Notes under the pieces: model-generated | What the model was told of the DNA's origin: nothing | What the model saw: only the letters and a program-made list of their open reading frames with translations | Databases searched by the model: none | Source: Mytilus californianus | Lineage: Eukaryota | Assembly (NCBI RefSeq): GCF_021869535.1 | Contig: NW_026262745.1 | Coordinates: 60,388,001 to 60,452,000, forward strand | Direction of reading: 5' to 3' | Length of the DNA stretch: 64,000 nucleotides | Shown here: one piece after another, positions 5,157 through 61,705 of the stretch | Position numbering within the stretch: the first letter of the stretch is position 1 | How the letters are laid out: every line of letters starts with the position of its first letter | Program-made: the position numbers and the translations under genes

Positions 5157-5890
5157 ATTATCATTGCATTTCTCAGTAGTTAAAAGAATTAAATAAAAGA
5201 ATTGCTACTTCATCGAAATGTATAAATAAAAATCCTCAAACGAATAGAATAATAGCTCTAACAAGTTTGTTTTTTTATAAAACTAAACCTGAAATAATTA
5301 AATAAATTAATTACATCTATCTACAGTGGTCCACAAACGTTACAATTTTAGCGATTATATTTCAAAATAAGCTCCTAATTTTTTTCTGCAACGCTAGTAC
5401 TTTGCCAGCCCTATTTTCATTTCATAACATTAACCGGATTTATAAAAAAAGTGAACAATACTAGAAAACACAAATCCCACTTCAACAAAATACCAGAATA
5501 AGTGTGTCATGTTGATACTAGTACTTATATACTCTCGACTCTTAATTGTCAACATTAGTTATTTATCTAACATGTCTATTATCATTGCATTTCACAGTAG
5601 TTAAAAAAATAAATATAAGAATTGCTACTTCATCAAAAGGTATAAATATGTTTTTTAAAACTAAAAATGAAATAATTGAATAAATAATTACATCTATCTA
5701 CAGCAATCCACCAACATTACTATTTAGCGATTACATTTCCAATTAAGTTCCTAAATGTTTTTTTGCAACCCTAGTACTTTGACATCCCTGATATCATTGC
5801 ATTTCATATCATTACATGGATTTATCAAAAACGTAAACAAAATACCAGTCTGGAATAAGTTTGTCCTATTGATACTAAAATGCATTAACA
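5157..5890. repeat. Diverged tandem duplication (~420-bp period) immediately 3' of the cGLR1 stop codon
   Basis: tattatcattgcattt(c)cagtagttaaaa...gaattgctacttcatc occurs at 5157 and 5577 with continued collinearity. Confidence 0.85.
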
Positions 5891-7830
5891 TTACAATGAG
5901 CTCATTAACGAAAGTCTCTTTACAGACGTATTATATCTGTAATTAGGGAATATTTTGTGTGACTGCATAAATGCCTGTCGTGCAGATTCACTGTCTCCTA
6001 ATAACTGTGAAGCAATACCAAGAATAGTGTAGGCTCTAGAAACAAAACATGTATTATTTTCAATAAAATAGTTTTCAGCTATAATAAGTTTTAAAGTGTG
6101 GAGGCAATCGTGACATTGTCTGATATTATTGAGATGATAATGACATACCAAGTTTAGAAAATAAGCATAAACTATAGAGGAAATGTGATATTGTCCATTT
6201 TCTACTTCCATTTGTAGTTCATATGGTATTAGCCTAGAATTTCTTGTAAATATCATAAAATCTACAAGTAATATTTTCCACATTTGTACAATACTTTTTC
6301 TTTGGAATACTTGCAAATCGGACAATTGGACATGCATATCCGACATATCCATGAAGCGATGTATTTTTTCGGGAGTAACTTTCGATATAGAATAATCGAT
6401 AATGTGTAACGCATTACTATATTGTTTATACTTATAGAAAAACGATGCTAACATCAGCCAACCAGAAACAGCGTCATGATGAACATTCTGTAGCAAAGTA
6501 CAGAGACAAGATTTGTACTGTTTGTATTGGTGTTTATTATTACTTTTTGTACTGTCTAGTGATATAGACCACACAAATGAGGCAGACATCATTGACATAT
6601 AGTATACGCATATATATTTGTTTAAGGATTTGTCACAGGAAACTATCTGATGTATTCCTGTTTTGTATGCATTCCATTTCAATGCTATACGATATATTGT
6701 ACTGTTTAACATATATAATGATTTTGAATTCAGTGGTTTTTGCAACAAATGTGGTTCTATGTTAATATTATATATTGATACATGAAAGTTGGATATTTGA
6801 TCCGAAAATAATATGCATCGCTATCCGTAACTATGCAGGTTATAAAGTTTCTCTAACAGTATTTCACGAGCGCGTCCTTCTATTTTGTTTTCAAACATGT
6901 TGTTTTCTTGTATGAAGTAATGTAAACAAACTGAATATTCAACATTATATATCAGTCTGCTAAAACATCGCATGAAACAATTTATAAGATTTTTAGGCTT
7001 CCATATTGATTGGGGTAATTCTTCTGATATCCAGAAAATAATTGTTTTCAAGAAATATGAACAGAGTAGTTCTCTACATTCGGTGTAGGTTTCTAATACA
7101 TCTTTCAAAAGAATTTTCAGGAGGGCATAGCATATTAATTGAGTGTGTGTAAAAGTATTTATTAGAAATTTTTCTCCAACAGAAAATGAAATTCGCCATT
7201 CTATATCCTCTTTTGGTGATCCCTTAACTCCGATTGGTACAAAAAGTACTCCGTGTTTTAAAATACTTTGTTTGACGTTATAACTTGGCCATGCGTTACT
7301 TGATCTTGTTATCCACTGTGATGCTTGTGATATCCATGTTGTACAATGTAAGCATAAGGCTTGGTCATACGTTCCAGTTTTGTTTGATAAACATGGTCCA
7401 TGAAGTACACCACTTGTTTTACGCAAAGTCTCTTGTTTAAATAATGCGCTCGAGAAATAATGTTTTCCATTACGTTCTTCACATAATATAGATAGAAATA
7501 GAGGATCCATGTGTTCTATTTGCAACTGAGTGATTTTAACCTTTACATCATCGGTTTCCATTGTTAAATATACATCATCTGAATTGTAAGTTTTAATTTT
7601 TTCATAAACTTTCAAAACTTTCTCTAAATACATTATATCCAAATCACTTCCTCTCATCTCAAGGCCTTCTCCAAAACTTCCACTTGTGATAATAATAAAC
7701 TCTTTGCCGCTTGTAAAATTATCCCTGACAGTATTGATCAGTCTCATTGTTTTTACATGATTCTCTGTTCCAACTATGTTCTGACACATGTAAAGATACA
7801 GTGCTAATGATAAGGTTTTTGTGTCTGAGT
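5891..7830 (-). pseudogene. cGLR paralogue 1 (Mab-21 nucleotidyltransferase + TPR-like tail), main exon, interrupted by one in-frame TAG at 6821-6823; pseudogene or a 338-aa truncated gene
   Basis: ORFs 6821-7867 and 5891-6748 share a frame (72 nt apart). Motifs present: TSGSFGEGLEMRGSDLDIM, YDQAL, WRISFSVGEKFL, LCSYFLKTIIFW, HYFIQENNMF. Paralogues read YGWRC where this copy has YG*RC. Acceptor tttatttcag ends at 7831, so the ORF-track N-terminus MTNYFINFVFIS is intronic. Confidence 0.9.
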
Positions 7831-8399
7831 CTGAAATAAACACGAAATTGATAAAATAATTAGTCATAAGGAATGAAAAACAATGTTCGCCATAATGATG
7901 TTAACATAGAACTACTATTAGAATTTAGCTTCAATGAGTTGTTGCGATGTCAACTTCTCTTAAAAATGGACTAGCTTTTGCTATCACTCTGTTAATTATT
8001 GTAACAATTCCTTTTAACTATTTGACAAGAGAGAACGAAACTACCAAAGGGATAGTCAAACTCACAAGTCAATGATAAAATGACAACGCCAAGGTAAAAA
8101 AAAAAAAAAACACCTTGAAAAATAATCAAAAGACAAACAACAGTAACTGTATACAAATACGACAAAGACACTAAATTCTAAGCAACACGAACCATGCACC
8201 AAAAACATAATTCTTGGGGATATCAATTGCTCCGGTAGGGTAGATAGATCTTGCTGGCACCCGCCTAACCATTTAAAAGTTGACTTTATTAATTTCTCAA
8301 AATCTATTCTATCCTATAATGTAGTATTAGCCTAGGGTAATATGAACAAATAATTTTTTGAAAAATTCTAAAAATATACATATATATATATGTAATTGT

Positions 8400-10670
8400 A
8401 AAGAACGTTCAAACCTATGATTGCGTTGGATAAAAACCGCAATTTTTATACTTGTGCATGCAAAAGCAATTTCTTGGTATAGGGGTCTAAATACAGCACA
8501 AACAACATTTTCCAAAAGACCAAAAAAGTGAAAAAGTATATTTTAGCAAAATGTTCTTAAACCCTGCTGACTGCCATTGACGATTGCCAAATAAACGGAT
8601 CACCGATGTAATAAATGGATCTTAATAATAAATTTAATACTAAACGAAAACAATAAACTTGCGGTAAAGATGGTATACCGCAAACAAAAGGTGCAAAGGT
8701 TTTTGTACACCATATCCGGATTTCGACAATTAATGTCTCTTCAGTGGTGTTAGAATTCGAAACGGTATTTGGAAAGCCATACAATTTACCTCAATTTAGG
8801 ATAGACTCTTGAATTTTGAGGAGTCAAAATAGGATGAACGGATCATATAAAACCCGAAGGCAAATATAATACAAGCCCAAACGAAAAAATATAAACAAGT
8901 CTAAAATGAAAACAACGTTCAAACCTATGATTGCGTTGGATAAAAACCGCAATTTTTATACGTGTGCATGCAAAAAAATTATTTGTAAGAGGGGTCTAAA
9001 TACAGCACAAACAACATTTTCCAAAAGACCAAAAAGTGAAAAAGTATACTAGTATTATAACAAAACGCATTTGACTAACAGGTCGAACAACAAATGTTCT
9101 TAAACCCTGCTGACGGCCATTGGCGATTGCCAAACAAACGGGTCACCGATGTAATACATGGATCTTAATTATTAATTTAATACTAAACAAAAACAATAAA
9201 CTTGCGGAAAAGATGGTATACCGCAAACAAAAGGTGCAAAGATTTTTGTACACCATATCCGGATTTCGACAATTAGTGTCTCTTCAGTGATGTTAGGAAT
9301 CGAAACGGTATTTGGAAAGCCATACAATTTACCTCAATTTAGGATTGACTCTTGAATTTTGAGGAGTCAAAATAGGATGAACGGATCCTATAAAACCCGA
9401 AGGCAAATATAATACAAGCCCAAACGAAAAAACATAAACAAGTCTAAATTGAAAACAATGTTCAAACCTATGATTGCGTTGGATAAAAACCGCAATTTTT
9501 ATACTTGTCATGCAAAAGTAATTTCTTGGTATAGGGGTCTAAATACAGCACAAACAACATTTTCCGTAAGACCAAAAAAGTGAAAAAGTATATTTTAACA
9601 AAACGCATTTGACTAACAGGTCGAACAACAAATGTTCTTAAACCCTGCTGACTGCCATTGGCGATTGCCAAATAAACGGATCACCGATGTAATAAATGGA
9701 TCTTAATTATAAATTTAATACTAAACAAAAACAATAAACTTGCGGAAAAGATGGTATACCGCAAACAAAAGGTGCAAAGGTTTTTGTACACCATATCCGG
9801 ATTTCGACAATTAATGTCTCTTCAGTGATGTTAGGAATCGAAACGGTATTTGGAAAGCCATACAATTTACCTCAATTTAGGATAGACTCTTGAATTTTGA
9901 GGAGTCAAAATAGGATGAACGGATCCTATAAAACCCGAAGGCAAATATAATACAAGCCCAAACGAAAAAATATAAACAAGTCTAAATTGAAAACAACGTT
10001 CAAACCTATGATTGCGTTGGATAAAAACCGCAATTTTTATACGTGTGCATGCAAAACAAATTTCTTGTAAGAGGGGTCTAAATACAGCACAAACAACATT
10101 TTCCAAAAGACCAAAAAAGTGAAAAAGTTTATTTAACAAAACGCATTTGACTAACAGGTCGAACAACAAATGTTCTTAAACCCTGCTGACTGCCATTGGC
10201 GATTGCCAAATAAACGGATCACCGATGTAATAAATGGATCTTAATTATAAATTTAATACTAAACAAAAACAATAAACTTGCGGAAAAGATGGTATACCGC
10301 AAACAAAAGGTGCAAAGGTTTTTGTACACCATATCCGGATTTCGACAATTAATGTCTCTTCAGTGGTGTTAGGAATCGAAACGGTATTTGGAAAGCCATA
10401 CAATTTACCTCAATTTATGATATACTCTTGAATTTTGAGGAGTCAAAATAGGATGAACGGATCATATAAAACCCGAAGGCAAATATAATACAAGCCCAAA
10501 CGAAAAAATATAAACAAGTCTAAATTGAAAACAACGTTCAAACCTATGATTGCGTTGGATAAAAACCGCAATTTTTATACGTGTGCATGCAAAACAAATT
10601 TCTTGTAAGAGGGGTCTAAATACAGCACCACCAACATTTTTCAAAAGACCAAAAAGTGAAAAAACAAGTC
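8400..10670. repeat. Tandem array of ~540-bp units (about 4.2 copies) derived from an interspersed repeat, inside cGLR1 intron 1
   Basis: The anchor aacgttcaaacctatgattgcgttgg recurs near 8404, 8914, 9457, 9995 and 10534 (periods about 510-543). Units are highly similar, and (TA)n-tgtaa tracts lie at both edges. Confidence 0.95.
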
Positions 10671-11812
10671 TAAATTGAAAATATATATATATATATATGT
10701 AAGAGTCTGAACCGCGATGGTACTCCGAACCGCGCTGGGAAAGCTGAGGTTAGATGGTTTGACGCTGAAGTGCGTTTTTCATCACGCTGAAATGCGATGG
10801 GGGCATTGTGACGCTAGCTTGTTGATAGCTACACCGAAGTGCGATGGTGCGATTGCTTCGTCAATACTTTGGTTCTTCCGAGGTTTATTAGCTACACGAC
10901 ATCTTTCTAAAACAGAATCTAATATTGGCCGAATTCTGGCAAGTTTGTCTGGTGAATCTGCTAATGGCTCATTCAGATGTAAATATCAAGTCAGCTTTTC
11001 TTTTTACAGACATGACATCTTTTACACCTTCTTTATTAAGGAATTCATTTGTCGACCATAAATACTTGTAGTCAGGAACTTGTATAATCCATATTAGAAT
11101 TAGGATTCCTAGTAAAGATAAAATTTACACTTTTAACTTTTTGTAATAAAAATATTACTTTTAATATCACTCTTAAATATACATCATGTACATGAGTATA
11201 TAGGCTGTGCATACATATCTTGAGATGTAAAAGTTCCCTGTCAAGTTTTATTATGTACTCTGCATGCATAGAGTACTAAACCTACTTCTACTTTTGAGAA
11301 TCATAAAATACATGTAACGAACAAACACAATTTTAAAATGACAGACATGTATAAAGGCATGTACAAACAAATAAATATTGTAAATTAGAACATGTGGTAT
11401 GAGTGCTAATGAGACAACTCTCAATCCAAGTCACAATGTATAAAAATAGTTAATAATTTTGGGTCAACGTACGGCCTACAACACAGACATCAAACAGCAA
11501 GCTATAAAGGACCACAAAATGACTATTGTAAAACTGATCTAACAGGAAAAATAATGGTCTAATCTATATACAACACGAGAAAAGAGAAACACATATAAAC
11601 CACATCAACAAACGACAACCAACTTCAACCACTGAACAACAGGCTTGTGACTTAGAACAGTGCATATAAATGCCTACATATGTATATATATATACCAGTT
11701 TCCAGGGAGTTTACTATGCATTTCGATTTTAACTTGATTAATTAACCAACCTTACAATCGTACACATATATAAACCATTGTTAGTTTGAACGGATATTTT
11801 TTTTTCACTTAC

Positions 11813-12254
11813 CTAAATATGCAGACATTTCAGCAAAATCTGTCTCCGTCCAGTTTGTGTCATTTCGTCCTGCTTGTTGCTATTTGTGTATTGCATTTAG
11901 GTTGGTCTCTTGGACAACTATACTGATCATATCTGTTGTGAAGAAGGTATTAAAACACTAACATCAGCATTCAATAAGACTTGAGATCCGGTACTTACGG
12001 TAAACTGTCGAACATTAACATCTTGATTGACCTCGCTCCATATAATTTTATTCGTGTCAGTATCATCATTTACATCCTCTTGATCCTGCAAGAATTCATC
12101 ATCAATGTCCTCTTCCTCCTTGCTTACAAACGTAACAACTATATCGGACACATTTCCGTTATCCTCACCTTCAATGCTTTCGTCAACTGATGTATTTTGA
12201 AGTGCTGGTTCAGACACAAACATCCCATACACTCGGCCTGCTGGAGGCCGCCAT
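11813..12254 (-). mobile_element. piggyBac (PGBD-like) transposase 5' relic with frameshifts and a stop
   Basis: ATG at 12254 in an AAATATGGCGGC context, an acidic N-terminal tract (ORF 11927-12232), then in another frame TFFTTDMISIVVQETNLNAIHK*QQAGRNDTNWTETDFAEMSAYLG, typical of the piggyBac transposase N-terminal region. Ends at a GTAAGT donor; no TTAA-bounded termini found. Confidence 0.8.
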
Positions 12255-12654
12255 ATTTGTTATTGTCGTCTGTTATTACATGTGAGAATCTCATGAATAT
12301 TCATTGCGTAAGTGTATAATTACCGCCCATTTCCTACGATAAGCACTGGCACTTGTCTCGTTTATTTATTTTTAAATGTCACCACATTTATTTATACGTG
12401 AAATTTTTACATTGACGTTTTCAAGACAAAATACATGAAAAGCGTAGGAAAGCGTATTTGCGGAGGACGGGGATAAGCGTAAAAGACGTATACGCGGTGT
12501 GAGGGGATAAGCGTAAAAAGTGTATATGCGTGGTAAAGGATGAACATACGTTAGAAATGCAGTTATTATATCTGATAAAGGAGTTCTTAAAACATACCGT
12601 TTTTCCATTAAACAGTAAAAAGAAATGTATATATATAAATTTTAGACCGATTTT

Positions 12655-14137
12655 ATTTTGTTTTAAATTCATAATGAAAATTTTCGAATTTAAAAGTGTC
12701 ATCAAGTGTATATTTACTTTCTACATTAATTTGAATACAGACAATTAATGATTATATATATTTAAAAAAATTAAAACATTATTAGTAAACGTCAATTATG
12801 TAAACCTTATGTTTTGTACTAGTATATCATTTAAGGATCATACAGAATTAACAACTTCAGTTTATATTATACCTGTCATCGTAGTTGGTCTGTTACGGTT
12901 AACGTGAAAATTTGTGTTCCTGTTTTTATCTGCAATCGTTGGCTATTCTATATAAATATTACTATACAACCTACACATCATTTATGTCTGTATTTTATAA
13001 TTAATGACACGTATTATTATTTTTCATTGGATAATATTGTCATTTCCACATCTTGTTCTAAGTATAAGTCAAAGGTTAAACAATAGTTTGAAAATAAACG
13101 GAAATAGAATGAAAGTTGGGGTACAATGGAGGGAAAATGTGTCTTGAATATTTATTTTTAGAAAATAATAAAAAGAATGGTTCCAAATTCCAACAATTTA
13201 CACGTTTTCCGTTAAGTAGATAGACATGTAAGAGTCATCCATAATGCAATTAACACAACAATCGAAAATCTAATTGACCACTGATGCTCATTTAATATAT
13301 CTATTTCCAAGAAATGACACAAAAACCGTTGCAAAAAGTATCACTATTACCAAACAAAACAAAAAATTAAACAATTCTTGTTTTAAGTATTAGTATATAA
13401 AGTCAATGTGAAATTAAAAGGATGCACACACGACAGTTGTTTAAAGTATCAAAATGCATAGAAAATGTTTTGTCATGTCTGCATTGTAGGCGATTAAAGG
13501 TCAGTTGGCAGTCAGTTATGTAGTATAACTGTTGAAAAGAATTTTGAAACTTATAATATTGATTTAAAACTGGATACTTAGTGACAAAAGGTCAATTGTG
13601 GTGTTTCTGTGATGTCATAAAATGTTGACATTGAAATATTTTACCTATCTTTGTCCCTTTACAGATAATTGACATGAGTCAAGGATTTACACAATAAGAT
13701 ATTATCTACATTGACATCTATATTAATTACATTTTGAAGTAAAATATCTTAATTAGGAAAAACTGTGTCTCACAGCTAAAAACAAATCCAAGATTATAAA
13801 ATACAACATAAGAAATTTAAAGTAGAAGTAAAAAAAAAAACGACAACATCATGACCGGAAAAAGGCGAACAGACAAAGTAAGGAACACAAAACACTGTGT
13901 TTCAATGTGAGTTATGGAGAAAAACATTTGTATTATATTGTTTTTAATTCATAAGGAAAAGTTTAGAAATTTTAAAGTGTCATCAAGTGTATATTTACCC
14001 TCTACATTAATTTAAACACCGAAAATTAATGATCATATATAAATAAAGACATTCTTAGAAAACGTCAATTATGTAAACTTTATGTTGTAGACTAGTATAT
14101 CATTTAAGGATCAAACAGAATTAATAACTTAAGTTTC
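12655..14137. repeat. Direct duplication of ~200 bp (12655-12862 and 13940-14137)
   Basis: aaagtgtcatcaagtgtatatttac...gtcaattatgtaaac...actagtatatcatttaaggatca is present twice. Confidence 0.85.
12873..12879 (-). CDS. Candidate 7-nt first coding exon of cGLR paralogue 1 (ATG ACA G, giving M-T-D-S-D-T-K)
   Basis: Minus strand reads taacag-accaactacg-ATGACAG|gtataa. Phase 1 matches the acceptor at 7830, and the aacag-N10-ATG spacing is the same as in the other two paralogues. The donor is weak. Confidence 0.5.
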
Positions 14138-25050: not shown

Positions 25051-25295
25051 CAAATCGTTAGACATAAGTGTGAATGAATACAAGTGGTCTAAGAAGTAAA
25101 AAGTTATTGCTCCACTAAATGAATCATTGGTTACAACAATTTTGTATTTCCCACTGTAATCAATATTTCTAGTTTTTAGATTTGTATTGATAGAAACAGT
25201 TTTAGAAAACAAAAATTAATCTTTTTGTTCGAAATTCATTCCTGTGAAACATGTTTGACAGTCTTTTACAATTTTTTCAACTGAATGCACAAATA

Positions 25296-27251
25296 TTACA
25301 ACAAGTTCATAAGTGTAAGTTTTTTTACAGAAGTATTACATCTTTGATTTGGCCCTATTTTAAATGACTGCAGAAATGCATGTCGGACGGATTCAATGTC
25401 TCCTAATAATTGTAAAGCAATTCCAAGAATAGTGTAGGCGTCAGATTGAAACATTACATAATTTTCAATTAAAAAAGTTTTCTGCTATAACAAGGTGCAA
25501 AGTTTGGATGGAATCCTGACATTGTCCGACATCATTTAGATGATAATGACATAAAAAGTTTAGAAAATAAGCATAAACTATAGAGGAAATAAAATATATT
25601 CCATTTTACACTTCCATTTGTAGTTCATTTTGGTATTAACCAAGAGTTTCTTGTAAATTTCATATGATCTATACGTATTATTTTCCACAATTGTACAATA
25701 CTTGTTCTTTCGAATAATTGCGAATCGGGCAATCGGACTCGAGTATCTGACATATCCTTGTCGCAAATTAGTTTTTCATCAGTAAATTTCAATATAGAAT
25801 AAGCAATGATGTGTAACGCATTACTATATTGTTTTGACTTATAGAAAAACGATGCTATCATCAGCCATCCAGATAACGCGTCATGATGAGTATTCTGTAG
25901 CAGAGTACAAAGACAGGAATTATACAGTTTGTAATGGTGTTTTTTTTTACTACTATTCGTACTGTGCAATGGAATAGACTGTGCATTTTGTCCAAACAAC
26001 AATGACATGTAGTATGTATAAAAGTGTTTTACTGGTGGTTGGTAACAGGAAACTATCCCGTGCATTCCTCTTTTGTATGCATTAGTGTCCCATTTAACTT
26101 CAATCGTTGCATTTGCCAAACATGATAGTTCTGAATTAAGTGTTTTTGCAACCTCGACAGTATGCAGTGTTTGTGGTTCAATTTGAACCATCCACATTGA
26201 TACATGAAAGTTAGATAATTGATCTGAAAATAAGATGCATCGCCATCCGTAACTATGCAGGGTATACAATTTCTCTAACAATATTTTGCGAGCGAGTCCC
26301 TCTATTTTGTTCTCAAACATGTTGTTCTCTGATATGAAGTAATGTAAACAAACTGAATAGTAAACACAATATATCAGTCTGCTAAAACATCTCATGAAAC
26401 AATGTATGAGATTTTCAGGTTCCCATATTGATTGCAGTAATTCTTCTGATATCCAGAATATAATTGTTTTCAAGAAATATGAACAGAGTAAATCTTCACA
26501 TTTGGTGTAAGTTACTATAACATCTTTCAAAAGAATTTTCAGGAGGGCATAACATATTAATTGAGTGTGTGTAAAAGTATTTATTAGGAATTTTTCACCA
26601 ACAGAAAAAGAAATTCGCCATTCTATAACCTCTTTTGGCGATTCCTTCACTCCCACCGGTACAAAAAGTACACTGTGTTTTAAAATACTTTGTTTGACAT
26701 TATAACTTGGCCATGTGTGACTTGATCTTGTTATCCACTGTGATGCTTGTGATACCCATTTTGTTCAATGTAAGCTCATGGCATTATCAAACTTTCCTGC
26801 TTTGTCAGCTATACATGGTCCATGGAAAACACTATCTGTATTACTCAAGAGCATTTGTTTGAATAATGCGCTCGTAATGTGTCCCATTAAGTTCCACAAA
26901 GCATTTATACGGAAATAGAGAATTCTTTTTTTCCTCTATCAACTTAGTGAAACCTGCTTTTACATCATCTGTTTCCATTGATAAATATATACCATTTGAA
27001 ATGTAAACCGGTTTAATGTCTTCATCAATCATAAAGTGTTTATTTACAAGCATTATATCTAAATCACTACCTCTCATCTCAAGGCCTTCTCCAAAACTTC
27101 TGCTTGAGATAGTGAGATTAAACTTGTCGCTTGTCACATTATCCCTGACAGCATTCATCAGTCTCAGATTTTTATACATGATTCTCTGATCCAACTATGT
27201 TCTGACACATATAACAATACAGTGCTAATGATATGGTTTTTGTTGCTGAGT
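25296..27251 (-). pseudogene. cGLR paralogue 2, main exon, multiply disabled
   Basis: Collinear with paralogues 1 and 3. Lesions: +1 frameshift near 27170, G>R in the GS loop (SSRSFGEG, 27099-27101), 5-nt deletion near 26876, TGA at 26765-26767, +1 near 25630, TAA at 25606-25608 and a further frameshift. Acceptor tttatttcag ends at 27252. Confidence 0.92.
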
Positions 27252-29335
27252 CTGAAATAAACAAGAAATCAATAAAATGATATTCATAATAGGAAATGAA
27301 ATACATTTTTCACTATTTTAATGTTAAAATAGAACTACTATTGCAATTTAGCTTCAATGAGTAGTTGCGATCTCAATTTATCTTAAAAATGGATGATCAA
27401 TTCACAATGATCATTTGTGATACTGATTTAATGGTGAAATTTTATACTACCCGACCGTTTAATAAAACTGTCATTATAACGAGTAATATTTGTTCTCGTT
27501 TGAAATAAGTCGAACATCTTTTATATATATCAGAAAGCAAACAACTATGAAATCTTGAGAGAACAGCATCTTCCTGCTCACATCCAAGTAGTAGTATTTT
27601 CGATTGATCATTTTATATTTTGCAAGTTAGTGTGTTAGTTTTTTAACGAACCTTAAATGACTTAAATAGTCCTTATGAGGCATCCACTGCGTAGTGCAGA
27701 GTACCAAATATGAGGAGTTCTTGTATCCTATGAAACAAGTCTACTAAACTATCGATAATAAAATACGATTGATATTATGATGGTCAATAAAGCAACAATC
27801 AACAAGAATAAAGACAAAATGGTAAATATTAAAGTACGATATATATATCTATATACTAGTATACTGATATCGTAAAGTAAGCGTTTTGACAAAACGTTGT
27901 GTAAAGCAAAAGATAAAATTAATTAAAATAGAATAACACAGACCGAGGTAAATGACAAGCACTGAATAACAAACTCCTGACGTTTCGTAACATAACAAGA
28001 AGAACATGTTGGAGATGAACATGTTTGTGAACCTGTCCCTCTTACATGTGACTAGTACAAATCTTTTGCAATAGATAATTCATGTATTAACCGCATTCTG
28101 TGACAGCGGTGTAACAACATAAAATAAAACCAGTATGTAAAACAGGATGGAAAGGGCTTGGCTGAACGTGATGTTTACCAAGCACATAAGAAAATAACAA
28201 CATTTAATATAAAAAGTACATAATTTACCGAGGTATGAGTAGTAACAGTTAAAAATCATAGTTTGTCCTTTTCATTACTATTTTGTCAAAAAGTTTGAAA
28301 AAACAAATTAAGACACGTAAATTATCACTTATATTATTTGTTTTATCACAATATCTTTTATGAATTTACAATGTGGGCTATTTTCATTTCGAGGTTTTGG
28401 TCCTGCATGGTATACAGTTTTGTACTTCATTTGGCGTTTAAACTGTTTTGATTGGAGCACCGAAAAGTTATATGTAGACGAAACGCGCGTCTATCATACA
28501 AAATATCAGCGTTGTATCTTTGATTAGTTTTTTAACATTGCAAATTCATGTTGAGGTGAGATATTTCTTCGGGAGGCCACTGTGGAGGACCGCCACGAAT
28601 TATTGAATACAGCAAAGGTATGCGTGTTAAATACAATTTTGACGATTCTATATGCATAATGATTATATTGGGACAGACAACCGCGGAATAAAATAGACAT
28701 CAAACTTCGCAACAGATGGTCATTTTACGAACGTATATGTTGAGTACCTTGTGTAATATACAAGCATGTTAGTTAGCGGTCGGTTTGTTTTTCGTTGTTT
28801 CATATGAGACAGATGAAGTGCAGCCAGCAGATTGATCGATATATAAAATTTCACAGAATAAAAGTAGAGTAAAATGATACTAAGAAGATTACGCTCATAG
28901 GTGCAGAATTCATGAAACAGTATGATAGTAAACATAATCCGTTATTGGGACATTTAGTTAAAACAGTTTCTTATTTTTTAGTCCTTTGTAAAAACTAAAA
29001 ATAATAAATAATCGCAAAATACAATTAATTATTACATATTTGAGGCCAGTTATAAGCTGTTATCTTGTGTAAATAAGTATATACATCGAATATTTCTAGT
29101 GTTTACTATTGATGTTAGCACCAGATAAAATCATAATATGTTGATTTATAATGTGATGTTATAATTCGAGTCACAAGTCTTATGTAGATTTTATTATTCG
29201 GATGCTAGTGTGCTAATTATGAGAAACGTTCACATTTCCAAAATGAATTGCCTCAAATGTTTTTTTTTGTTAGTTACTAGTTGCCGAATACAATTAGAAC
29301 ATTTCTTAGTTAAATATATGTCTGAATTTTCTCAC

Positions 29336-33916: not shown

Positions 33917-35895
33917 TCACAACAAGTTTGAGTTCATTAACGAAAGTCGCTTTCCAGCAGCGTTGCATCTGTCGACTGGAAATAATTTAAATGACTGCAT
34001 GAAAGCTTGACGGGCGGATACTATGTCGCCAATCATCCGTAAAGTTATACCAAGAAGATTATAGGCTTCAGCTTCATCTGAACCGTTTATAAAATAGTTT
34101 GATGTGATAATCGATTTCAAATATTTGATGCAATTATGGCATTGTATGGTATTATTTTGATGATAATGACAAAGGAACTTAAGAAAATACGCATAAGCTA
34201 AAGATGGAAAACAAAATGATCCATATCCTAATTCTTCATCCATTTGTAGTTCATCTGGTATTAAAGCAGATGTCCTTTGAAAATGCAAAACATCTACATA
34301 TATTATTTTCCACAATTGAACAATACTTTTCTTCTGGAATGATTTCAGTTTGAGTAATTGGTGATGAATATCCGACATATCCATGAAGCGGCACAGTTTT
34401 TCGGGAGTACATTTTGATATAGAATACATAATGATGCGTAATGCTTTACGATATTGTTTTGCTTTACAGAAAAACGAAGCTAACATCAGCCATCCAGAAA
34501 CAGCGTCATGATAGATATTTTGTAGCAGAATACAAAGACAGGAATTATACAGTTTGTATTGGTGTTTATTACTTTTTCTAGTACTGTTCAGTGGAAAAAA
34601 TTGTGCGTATTGCGCACACCACAATGACATGTTGTATGTATATGCATATTTTAGTGAGGATTCGTCACAGGAAACTATCTGGTGTATTCCTCTTATGTAT
34701 ATATATGATAAATATGGTGTCCATACAAAAAAAGATATCATATCATTTGACAAATGTAATAATCTGGAATTCAGTGTTTTTTCAACATCGCTAATATGCA
34801 ATTCGTGAGGTTCAATCTGAACCATCCACATTGATGCATGAAAATTAGATAATTTATCTGAAAATAAAAGGCATCGCCAACCATAACTATGCAAGGTAAC
34901 TAGTTTTTGCAAAAGTATTTCACAATAACTCCCCTCTATTCTATTTTCAAACATGTTGTTTTCCGGAATAAAGTAATGAAACAAAGCTGAATACTCAACA
35001 CAATATATCAGCCTGCTAAAGCAACGCATAAAACAATGTATAAGATTGTCAGGTTTCCATACGGATAGTGGTAATTCCTCTGATATCCAGAACATAATTG
35101 TTTTCAAGAAATATGAACAGAGTAAATCTTTACATTCGGTGTCGGTTGCTATTAGATCTTTCAAAAGAATTTTTAATAGGGCATAGCATAATAATTGAGT
35201 GTGCGTGAATGTATTAATAAGAAATTTTTCGCCAACAGAAAAAGATATCCGCCATTCTATATCTTCTTTGGGTGATCCCTTAACTCCGACTGGTACAAAA
35301 AGTACTCCGTGTTTGATAATACTTTGTTTGACACAAGTCTTCGGCCATGAGTTCCGCGATCTTGTTATCCAAGGTACTGCTGGTGATATCCATTTTTTAC
35401 AATGTAAGCTCCTGGCATTGTCATACGTTCCGTCTGGGTCAGATACACAGGGTCCATGAACTACACTTTGTGTATTCCTCATAAGGTCTTCTTTATATAA
35501 TGTGCTCGAAAAATAATGTTTTCCATCAAGTTCTTCAATGTATTGGAATAAAAATTTACTATTACCTTGTAGTAGCAACTGAGTGAAACCAGGTTTTACA
35601 TCATCTGTGTCCATCGAAAAATATACAACCCTTAAATTAAAAGGCTTTTTTATATCATGTATATCTTCACAAACCTCAATGAATTTAAATACATACATCA
35701 TATCTAAATCACTACCTCTCATCTCAAGCCCTTCACCAAAACTCCCACTTGTGATCTGGGTACGGAGCTCGTCGCTTACCACACTATCTCTGATAGTATG
35801 CAGTAGTCTCATTGTGTTAACATGACGTTCTGTTCCAACTATGGTCTTGCACAAAAAACGATAAAGTGCTTTTGATGTGTTTGTTGTAACAGTAT
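33917..35895 (-). CDS. cGLR paralogue 3 (cGAS-like receptor, Mab-21 NTase + TPR tail), main coding exon, intact
   Basis: Open frame with TSGSFGEGLEMRGSDLDMM (catalytic DxD), YDNARSL (third acidic residue), WRISFSVGEKFL, LCSYFLKTIMFW, HYFIPENNMF and two TPR-consensus helix pairs. Acceptor tttattttag ends at 35896. 1979 nt plus the 7-nt exon gives 662 codons. Confidence 0.93.
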
Positions 35896-60565: not shown

Positions 60566-61489
60566 ATGGATGCCTTATTGAATGGAATTTTGTCCTCCAA
60601 CCATCCAGATCAACTGAAGAAGCAGTTACTGCATAAAATTGCAGATAAAGGGGCACAACCACAGGCAATAAAAACAATAAAATCTGTATTTGAACTCACT
60701 GTAAACTGGTACCTGGAAATTGATAATGAGCTAGCATCAAATGAAAGCTTGACTATTTTAAAATCTTGGGCTAAACACAATTTGTCAACTTTTGAACAAT
60801 TTTTTGACAGAGATTATTTAGTTGGTTTACTTTTGAAAAAATGTCGCAGAGAATGCAACATACCGATTCTTGTCAAGGAATGTTTACATCTTCTTCAGCG
60901 TTCGTCCATATTTTATAGTCACCTAAAAGTTGTAGAAGCGATGGCTATTAATTATGTACAACAACACCCTTCAATGGCTTCCATCGTGAACTTCATTAGT
61001 TTGTTAAGAACTTTTAAAGAATGCATACCGAAAGGTGATTTCACGTCAAAATTTTGTGTTGCATTGATAAATGGGGTCGCATTAGTAGGTCATCCAGATG
61101 GAAAGGTCTTAGAATATATTCAGGGTTCTGAATTAATTTTCAAGTTCATCAACGCGTTATGGAACCAAGCAGATTCTAAATTCATTTTGGAATCATTAAA
61201 AGCCGTGTTCACCTTAATTTCTGACGAAAGCATAGAAATGACTTTCTGTCTTGGAGCGATTGTTCAGCATATTCCAAAAGAGATGATCGATATCGTTGTT
61301 AGATATGCGGTGTTTGAAAGTAATATAGATGATGACAGTATGACGAGGGCATTAAATAGGATCATAGGTTGGATCCAATGGCCAACAGCGATAAACGTCA
61401 GTGTTTGGATAATTGGATTTTTGCAGAGTCTTGCAGCAGAAAAGAGATTCACTGTTTTGATATCTGTCACTGAGGCCAAAATAGAACAG
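60566..61489 (+). CDS. USP38: USP35/USP38-family ubiquitin carboxyl-terminal hydrolase, first coding exon (N-terminal helical region, 308 codons); gene continues beyond the window
   Basis: MDALLNGILSSNHP...ECIPKG...LGAIVQHIP...MTRALNRIIGWIQWP...WIIGFLQSLAAEKRFTVLISVTEAKIEQ matches, from memory, the USP38 N-terminus (MDKILEGLVSSSHP...QCIPKG...LASLVQHIP...MTQALCRMIDWLSWP...KIELV). Phase-0 donor CAG|gttaga at 61490; upstream acceptor tttctctttcag ends at 60522. Confidence 0.88.
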
Positions 61490-61504
61490 GTTAGAAATCG
61501 ATTA

Positions 61505-61705
61505 CTGTGGATTCATTATTATTCGACGCGTACCAATTTTCGTGGTTTTCATGGGTACAGGTAAACCACGAATTTAAATGTTCAACGAATTACAAATTTT
61601 CTTGAAGATTGTATGCAGTATTTGGCATAATCAAGTATCCACAAAAATGCAAGTTTTTCTGAATCCACGAAAATTGGTACCCACGAAATATAAATGAATC
61701 CACAG
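61505..61705. mobile_element. 201-bp TA-flanked MITE, copy 3, just inside the intron after the first USP35/38 coding exon
   Basis: ta|ctgtggattcatt ... aatgaatccacag|ta with TIR and TA target duplication. Confidence 0.9.

What the first reader, a model, noticed from the sequence alone, without database searches (positions are those of the whole stretch)
6821..6823. Single nonsense codon cuts off the TPR tail exactly at the end of the cGAS-like domain
Seen: the only lesion in paralogue 1 is TGG>TAG in YG(W)RC, immediately after HYFIQENNMFENKIEGRAREILLEKLYNLHSYG; the next 309 codons stay open to the normal stop, and catalytic residues are intact. Known: the equivalent segment (YFIPEFNLF...) lies about 30 residues from the human cGAS C-terminus, and a stop in the last exon escapes EJC-dependent NMD. 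Inference: the product would be a complete 338-aa minimal cGAS-sized enzyme with no TPR tail, possibly deregulated or with a new trigger, rather than a dead gene. The TAG-C context also allows leaky readthrough to two isoforms. A recent null allele or a consensus error are the alternatives.
Basis: partly seen in the sequence, partly recalled or inferred. Interest (0 to 1): 0.8.

Follow-up and report, generated by a model that had tools for sequence, protein, structure and literature searches.

The report
Young nonsense allele in mussel cGLR-TPR gene
One copy of a very large mussel family of cGAS-like immune enzymes carries a real, recent stop codon that cuts off its helical-repeat tail right after the enzyme domain; this is most likely ordinary gene turnover, not a newly invented enzyme.

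Summary
On the minus strand, 6821-6823 reads TAG where both neighbouring paralogues and 98% of family members have TGG (Trp). It lies just past the last helix of the Mab-21/cGAS-like domain. The 309 codons after it stay open to the normal TAA.

The window is Mytilus californianus. The 338-aa product is already in RefSeq (XP_052078277.1, LOC127716191). The TAG is not an assembly error: contigs from two DNA runs of different studies carry it, and no TGG was seen. The stop sits in the last exon, because the only intron follows the 7-nt ATGACAG first coding exon. The catalytic GS/DxD/D residues are intact.

The "new deregulated enzyme" reading is not supported:
- Tail and enzyme domain show the same purifying selection, so the stop is very young (under about 1.5-3.5% neutral divergence).
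- No P1-specific RNA was found.
- The full-length AlphaFold model (pTM 0.87) treats tail and core as one rigid unit.
- The family has hundreds of copies, with a decayed pseudogene next door and many truncated members.

My verdict is a recent truncating, probably null or nearly neutral, allele in a birth-and-death cGLR-TPR family. One weak side lead: a distant paralogue has a single stop at the adjacent codon, also followed by an open tail.

The parts
12873..12879 (-). P1 first coding exon end: ATG ACA G followed by a GT donor. It supplies M, T and the first base of D3.
   Evidence: 77% identical over 472 nt to the exon-1/promoter region of the M. edulis homologue (L001). That homologue's annotated CDS starts ATGACAG|GT.
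7831..12872 (-). The only coding-region intron of P1 (about 5 kb, GT...AG).
   Evidence: Donor and acceptor checked. The same two-exon plan is seen in M. edulis L001.
6824..7830 (-). Exon 2, Mab-21/cGAS-like nucleotidyltransferase domain (residues 3-338), with G53 S54, D65, D67 and D158.
   Evidence: Pfam PF03281 and PF20266. PDB profile hits to Sp-cGLR1 and cGAS at E 4e-19 to 1e-14. Foldseek on the P3 model hits cGAS at E 5e-10. 100% identical to XP_052078277.1.
6821..6823 (-). Premature TAG (W339*), derived from TGG by one G>A transition; next base is C.
   Evidence: Read support in two DNA runs.
5894..6820 (-). 309 open codons of the TPR-like alpha-solenoid tail, now downstream of the stop, with all family-invariant residues kept.
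   Evidence: AlphaFold model is all-helical. TPR support is weak only: Pfam 18 bits against a cut-off of 27, and Foldseek E of 0.02 or worse to MamA/CTPR/LGN/Rap.
5891..5893 (-). Ancestral stop codon TAA of the full-length 648-codon frame.
25290..27262 (-). Paralogue P2: a decayed pseudogene copy, with at least 4 frameshifts and 3 in-frame stops. It keeps TGG at the W site.
   Evidence: tblastn frame map.
33917..35895 (-). Paralogue P3 exon 2: an intact 661-aa cGLR-TPR gene. Its exon 1, ATGGCAG|GT, lies at 39869-39863.
   Evidence: Called as a 661-residue product in the public annotation.

Best explanation
P1 is LOC127716191 of Mytilus californianus. It is one member of a tandemly duplicated, very large mussel family of cGAS-like receptors, in which a Mab-21 nucleotidyltransferase core is fused to a TPR-like helical solenoid of about 310 residues. 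A recent single G>A transition turned the conserved Trp339 codon into TAG, just after the last helix of the core.

The allele is real and is not private to one animal. Everything else in the gene is still pristine: promoter-proximal exon, splice sites, catalytic residues and tail ORF. That fits a mutation too young for decay or selection to have left a trace.

The most likely reading is an incipient pseudogene, or a nearly neutral truncation allele, in a redundant birth-and-death immune gene family. If transcribed, the mRNA would encode a 338-aa tail-less core. That core would lack a module which the family keeps under purifying selection and which is predicted to pack rigidly on the core, so it is more likely impaired than newly empowered.

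Shown: the lesion, its reality, its position, the gene model and its young age. Inferred: loss or neutrality of function.
For: - The lesion and its ancestral state TGG.
- Reads: TAG in X1 and in X3, which are different studies, with no TGG contig.
- Species and annotation.
- Family size: 799 hits with E<=0.001 among Mytilus spp.. Bivalve cGLR radiations and TPR-fused cGLRs are described in PMC9980059.
- Neighbouring copy P2 is a decayed pseudogene.
- Annotated family members end at many positions between 140 and 635. Two that I checked are frameshifted, with decayed tails.
- The tail matters to the family: pairwise omega is 0.38-0.46 in tails against 0.20-0.41 in cores, with invariant tail residues.
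- P1-branch N/S is 26/23 in the tail against 20/14 in the core, while the pseudogene P2 tail shows 21/6.
- The absence of a second lesion bounds the stop's age at about 1.5-3.5% neutral divergence.
- The full-length model has pTM 0.87. The tail modelled alone loses confidence in its first 110 or so residues.
- No P1-specific RNA. Only 1 partial read out of 10.3 M raw RNA reads was laid. The RNA-like contigs cover only the multi-copy conserved core at 6995-7234. The 338-aa protein is on record from one contig only.
Against: - The truncation leaves a complete catalytic domain, and most animal cGLRs have no appended domain (87%, PMC9980059), so a tail-less product could be active.
- The stop is in the last exon, so EJC-dependent NMD would not remove the mRNA.
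- The allele turned up in the one independent individual examined, so it is probably not rare.
- A distant paralogue (L004) has a single stop at the adjacent codon, also with a fully open tail. This hints that truncation at the junction may recur more often than chance.
- The expression evidence is thin: one RNA run was sampled at 6%, its tissue is unknown, and I had no positive control.
Confidence: 0.65

Rival explanations
1. Functional tail-less enzyme. The 338-aa product is expressed, folds, and works as a minimal cGLR whose regulation or trigger differs from the TPR-tailed parent, and the allele is kept or favoured by selection.
For: - Complete Mab-21 domain with an intact GS/DxD/D triad.
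- The stop is in the last exon.
- The allele is present in two samples.
- Mab-21-only cGLRs are the commonest architecture.
- Other family members are cut within about 10 codons of the same junction while keeping an open Mab-21 ORF: L004, L002/P0141 and L005/P0222.
Against: - No signature of selection is possible or visible yet, since both halves show the same omega.
- No RNA evidence.
- The tail is conserved across the family and predicted to be rigidly docked on the core.
- Enrichment of truncations at the junction is marginal: 4 of about 43 clean end points fall in 18 of 650 codons, the cases were found by looking for them, and other clusters of end points exist.
Confidence: 0.2
2. Two isoforms from one gene. 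Leaky readthrough of UAG-C, or A-to-I editing of UAG to UIG (read as Trp), yields both a 338-aa core and a 648-aa full-length protein.
For: - C at +4 is the weakest termination context (established knowledge).
- The downstream 309 codons are open and pristine.
- UAG to UGG recoding by ADAR is known from hepatitis delta virus (own knowledge).
Against: - The stop is not conserved: P2, P3 and Mytilus homologues all have TGG.
- The open tail is explained by the young age of the stop alone.
- There is no unusual RNA structure within 100 nt either side (z = +0.46).
- The second junction stop, in L004, is TGA-A, a different context, and the M. edulis relative has GGA there.
- Basal readthrough is typically below 1% (own knowledge).
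Confidence: 0.05
3. Assembly or consensus error: the animal really carries TGG.
For: None found; this was an a priori possibility only.
Against: - Independent short-read-derived contigs from two studies read TAG with zero mismatches across the site. One of them is at full unique-copy depth of about 23x.
- No alternative letter was listed at 6821-6823.
Confidence: 0.02

Closest known systems
Animal cGAS-like receptors (cGLRs) with appended TPR repeats (Li et al. 2023, PMC9980059)
   Same: - Mab-21/cGAS fold.
- Invariant GS...DxD...D active site.
- C-terminal helical-repeat module.
- Very large lineage-specific radiation in bivalves.
   Different: This copy carries a premature stop that removes the repeat module. 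The tail matches TPR only weakly (Pfam below threshold, Foldseek E of 0.02 or worse). No enzymatic product or ligand is known for any member of this mussel clade.
Human and mouse cGAS catalytic domain, and Stylophora Sp-cGLR1 (PDB 8gjy)
   Same: The 338-aa product spans the whole equivalent of the crystallised catalytic domain and ends about 8 residues before the end of the mouse construct. The third catalytic Asp aligns with the VDLTL/SVDITL motif.
   Different: About 20% sequence identity. There is no disordered basic N-terminus, ligand specificity is unknown, and the parent protein normally carries a tail of about 310 residues.
Young (unitary or polymorphic) pseudogenes in birth-and-death immune gene families, such as bivalve TIR and lectin expansions with presence/absence variation
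   Same: A single disabling mutation in an otherwise pristine ORF, a decayed tandem copy next door, and many truncated relatives.
   Different: The lesion falls exactly at a domain boundary and in the last exon, so a folded and possibly active fragment remains conceivable.

Membership tests
cGLR / Mab-21 (cGAS-like) nucleotidyltransferases | Mab-21 NTase core plus C-terminal helical lobe fold | tested here: met
   Pfam PF03281 (26 bits) and PF20266 (55 bits), both above the 24.1 cut-off. Profile hits to Sp-cGLR1 at 4e-19 and to cGAS at about 1e-15. Foldseek on the paralogue model: cGAS at E 5e-10, target-normalised TM 0.64-0.70.
cGLR / Mab-21 (cGAS-like) nucleotidyltransferases | Active-site G-S ... 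[D/E]x[D/E] ... D triad | tested here: met
   G53 S54, D65, D67 and D158 in P1. These positions are invariant in 88 family members. The third Asp aligns with the catalytic Asp of Sp-cGLR1.
cGLR / Mab-21 (cGAS-like) nucleotidyltransferases | Ligand-activated synthesis of a cyclic (di)nucleotide that signals through STING | not testable with these tools
   Needs biochemistry.
TPR repeat proteins | Significant match to TPR sequence or structure models | tested here: inconclusive
   Pfam TPR_1 and TPR_2 score 18.6 bits against cut-offs of 27-28. All the best Foldseek hits are TPR proteins, but at E 0.02-0.15. The model is an all-alpha solenoid.
Pseudogene | Disabling lesion relative to intact relatives | tested here: met
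   W339* removes 48% of the ancestral protein.
Pseudogene | Relaxed selective constraint | tested here: not met
   Tail omega is 0.38-0.46, the same as in an intact pair. P1-branch N/S in the tail is 26/23, against 21/6 for the P2 pseudogene tail. This is expected if the lesion is very young.
Pseudogene | No expression | tested here: inconclusive
   One partial read out of 10.3 M RNA reads. RNA-like contigs lie only on the multi-copy conserved core. One run, no positive control.
Programmed stop-codon readthrough gene | Stop conserved in relatives, with a conserved downstream ORF and a stimulatory context or structure | tested here: not met
   Relatives have TGG. There is no structure (z +0.46). 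Only the +4 C fits.

The most novel reading that the evidence does not exclude
Cutting the TPR-like tail off at the Mab-21/tail junction may be a recurrent, tolerated or even favoured way for mussels to diversify their cGLR repertoire. P1 has TAG at W339. LOC127720287, on another chromosome, has TGA one codon earlier with 302 open tail codons. P0141 and P0222 have frameshifts within about 10 codons after the junction, with decayed tails but open Mab-21 ORFs. On this reading P1 would be the youngest example of a natural series of tail-less, differently regulated enzymes.
Probability: 0.12. Interest if true: 0.55.

Novelty: new member of a known kind. Interest (0 to 1): 0.25.

Why it matters
If the truncated allele were expressed and active, it would be a natural separation-of-function variant. 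It could show what the TPR-like module does in TPR-fused cGLRs (autoinhibition, ligand capture or partner docking), an architecture that has been catalogued but not characterised. As it stands, the locus mainly illustrates rapid birth-and-death turnover in the huge cGLR repertoire of mussels. It also warns that RefSeq models such as XP_052078277.1 can be recent truncations of longer genes.

Tried and rejected
1. Assembly error. Rejected by contigs from two runs.
2. A close paralogue confusing the read placement. The best non-self protein hit is 73-75% identical, and only the conserved core at 6966-7400 shows multi-copy depth.
3. I ran it pairwise and on the P1 branch and found no difference, which gives information on age only.
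4. L004 and L005 as an orthologous pair, to test selection on tail-less genes. Rejected: 54% aa identity and dS 1.3, so they are not orthologues.
5. RNA structure near the stop, as support for readthrough or editing. None found.
6. Metagenome scan for either allele with a 33-nt pattern. No match.
7. First conservation script was out of frame. I discarded it and redid it.
8. Earlier notes of this scan by place. Nothing near.
9. The bacterial promoter/terminator scan and Pfam on small intronic ORFs were uninformative.
10. I could not lay reads across both exon 1 and the stop in one call because of the 6000-letter limit, so splicing was not observed directly.

Full report
**Observation**

Read on the minus strand, window 5891-7867 translates as a Mab-21 domain ending ...HYFIQENNMFENKIEGRAREILLEKLYNLHSYG. 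Then comes TAG at 6821-6823, followed by RCILFSDQ... and 309 open codons up to TAA at 5891-5893.

The aligned codon is TGG in both paralogues in the window and in an M. edulis homologue. The Trp is present in 98% of 93 full-length homologues. The lesion is therefore one G>A transition, and it is not at a CpG.

**Identity of the locus**

The N-terminal piece is 100% identical over its whole length to a 338-aa RefSeq protein, XP_052078277.1 (LOC127716191) of Mytilus californianus. That protein lies on the 99.9-Mb scaffold JAKFGE010000009.1 of GCA_021869535.1.

The gene model was recovered by comparison with an annotated M. edulis homologue (L001):
- Exon 1 ends ATGACAG|GT at 12879-12873. It sits inside a 472-nt stretch that is 77% identical between the two species.
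- A 5-kb intron follows.
- Exon 2 starts at 7830, after an AG acceptor.

It also shows that the stop lies in the last, and only large, coding exon.

**Context in the window**

Three tandem copies lie on the minus strand:
- P1, the subject of this report.
- P2 (about 25290-27262), with at least four frameshifts and three stops.
- P3 (33917-35895, plus exon 1 at 39869-39863), intact and called as 661 aa in the public annotation.

The family is very large. A search with P3 gave 799 proteins at E<=0.001, nearly all from Mytilus species. Li et al. 2023 (PMC9980059) had already described extreme cGLR radiations in bivalves and a minority of cGLRs fused to TPR or ankyrin repeats.

**What the protein is**

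Several results place the N-terminal half in the cGLR family:
- Pfam Mab-21 and Mab-21_C score above threshold.
- A family profile hits Sp-cGLR1 (8gjy) at 4e-19 and cGAS at about 1e-15. The invariant Asp159 of the family aligns with the catalytic Asp of the VDLTL motif.
- An AlphaFold model of the intact paralogue (pLDDT 87, pTM 0.87) finds cGAS structures first, at E 5e-10.

P1 keeps G53-S54, D65, D67 and D158.

The tail is an all-helical solenoid. Its only structural neighbours are TPR proteins, and those matches are weak (E 0.02-0.15). Pfam TPR hits are below threshold. 'TPR-like' is therefore a fair description, but membership of the TPR family is not proven.

The stop falls between the last Mab-21 helix and the first tail helix. 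That is about 8 residues before the end of the mouse cGAS catalytic construct.

**Is the stop real?**

Yes.
- A contig from run X1 covers 6648-6874 with no differences at depth 23, which is the unique-copy depth of that run. X1 may come from the reference animal.
- A contig from run X3, from another study and sample, covers 6610-6848 with no differences. The site is 25 nt from that contig's end, short of the tool's 31-nt bridging rule.
- No alternative letter is listed at the site.

Because contigs can drop minor alleles, heterozygosity cannot be excluded.

**How old is it, and is the tail still constrained?**

- P1 departs from strongly conserved family columns at only P310Q, W339* and L564V. 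It ranks in the middle of intact members for both halves.
- Pairwise dN/dS for P1 against P3 or the M. edulis gene is 0.28-0.41 in the core and 0.38-0.46 in the tail. The intact P3/M. edulis pair gives 0.20-0.37 and 0.43-0.44.
- Changes assigned by parsimony to the P1 branch are 20 N / 14 S in the core and 26 N / 23 S in the tail. The pseudogene P2 tail shows 21 N / 6 S.
- 5.3% of substitutions in the tail would create a stop. With indels at 5-20% of the substitution rate, the absence of any second lesion in 927 nt bounds the neutral age of the stop at roughly 1.5-3.5% divergence (95%).

The tail was therefore under selection for essentially all of P1's history, and the stop is very recent. 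It cannot show retention of the truncated gene.

**Expression**

- From 10.3 million raw RNA reads of the same species (about 6% of run X21), only one read was partly laid on the 2.6-kb stretch.
- The RNA-like contigs of X15 lie only on 6995-7234. That is the family's most conserved segment, where DNA depth is 10-60 times the unique level, so they cannot be assigned to P1.
- The exact 338-aa protein is on record from the genome contig only.

This is absence of evidence from a thin sample. It is not proof of silence.

**Structure-based inference**

The high pTM of the two-domain model (0.87) indicates a fixed core-tail arrangement. When the P1 tail is modelled alone, its first 110 or so residues drop to pLDDT 35-63, while the equivalent region scores 72-92 in the full-length paralogue model. 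I infer that the proximal tail docks on the core, so truncation would expose an interface. This is an inference from confidence scores across two different sequences. I could not measure the interface directly.

**Readthrough and NMD**

The +4 base is C, the weakest termination context (established knowledge). However, the stop is not conserved, and there is no stable RNA structure around it (z +0.46).

The last-exon position does avoid EJC-dependent NMD. From my own knowledge, NMD in Drosophila, C. elegans and yeast does not depend on EJCs and is triggered by long 3' UTRs. This stop would lengthen the 3' UTR by about 930 nt. Which rule applies in molluscs is unknown to me.

**Family-wide view of truncations**

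Annotated family proteins end at positions scattered from 140 to 635 on the P3 scale. I examined three loci whose products end near the junction:
- L004 (M. californianus LOC127720287, scaffold 11; 43% identical to P1). It has a single in-frame TGA one codon before the W-equivalent, where the M. edulis relative has GGA. Then come 302 open codons ending at the family's normal C-terminus.
- L002 (P0141). It shifts frame about 8-12 codons after the junction. Its tail is twice frameshifted and more diverged.
- L005 (P0222, M. edulis). It also shifts frame shortly after the junction.

Four of about 43 clean end points fall within 18 of 650 codons. That is roughly a three-fold excess, but I found these cases by looking for them, and other clusters of end points exist. 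I record this as a lead, not a result.

**Verdict**

The best-supported reading is a young, real nonsense allele, already annotated as a 338-aa protein, in a redundant and fast-turning-over cGLR-TPR family. I regard it as an incipient pseudogene or a near-neutral truncation (0.65). A functional tail-less enzyme remains possible (0.2) and could be tested with ordinary genotyping, RNA-seq and biochemistry. Readthrough or editing (0.05) and assembly error (0.02) are unlikely.

Noticed in passing
L004:4001-5950 (M. californianus JAKFGE010000011.1, LOC127720287): A second family member, on another chromosome and only 43% identical to P1, has one in-frame stop (TGA, where the M. edulis relative has GGA). 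It lies one codon before the W-equivalent at the Mab-21/tail junction and is followed by 302 open tail codons.
   Followed up: partly
L002:9769-11675 and L005:4001-5943: P0141 (M. californianus) and P0222 (M. edulis) keep open Mab-21 ORFs of 352 and 359 codons. Both shift frame within about 10 codons after the junction, and their tails are further frameshifted or partly deleted.
   Followed up: partly
window 25290-27262 (-): Paralogue P2 is a decayed copy. It has frameshifts near 27172, 26880, 25645 and 25480, and in-frame stops in 'LH*TKW', 'LG*YQ' and 'EV*NG'. The public annotation still calls a 378-aa fragment from it (P0177).
   Followed up: yes
window 13946-14134 (-): A second copy, 83% identical, of the intron-1 start of the M. 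edulis homologue lies about 1 kb upstream of P1 exon 1. It has no matching exon and is probably a remnant of another duplicate.
   Followed up: no
window 60566-61564 (+): An ORF of 332 aa matches the USP38-like N-terminal domain (PF21246, E 1e-63). It is probably an exon of a deubiquitinase gene flanking the cGLR array.
   Followed up: no
window 5300-5890 (-): No AATAAA or ATTAAA hexamer occurs within 590 nt downstream of the ancestral TAA of P1. The 3' end of the transcript is therefore undefined.
   Followed up: no
window 6966-7400: DNA contig depth is 10-60 times the unique level over the GVKGSPKEDIEWRISFSVGEKFLINTFTHTQL core. Near-identical 31-mers must be shared by many paralogues, which could reflect very strong constraint or gene conversion.
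   Followed up: no
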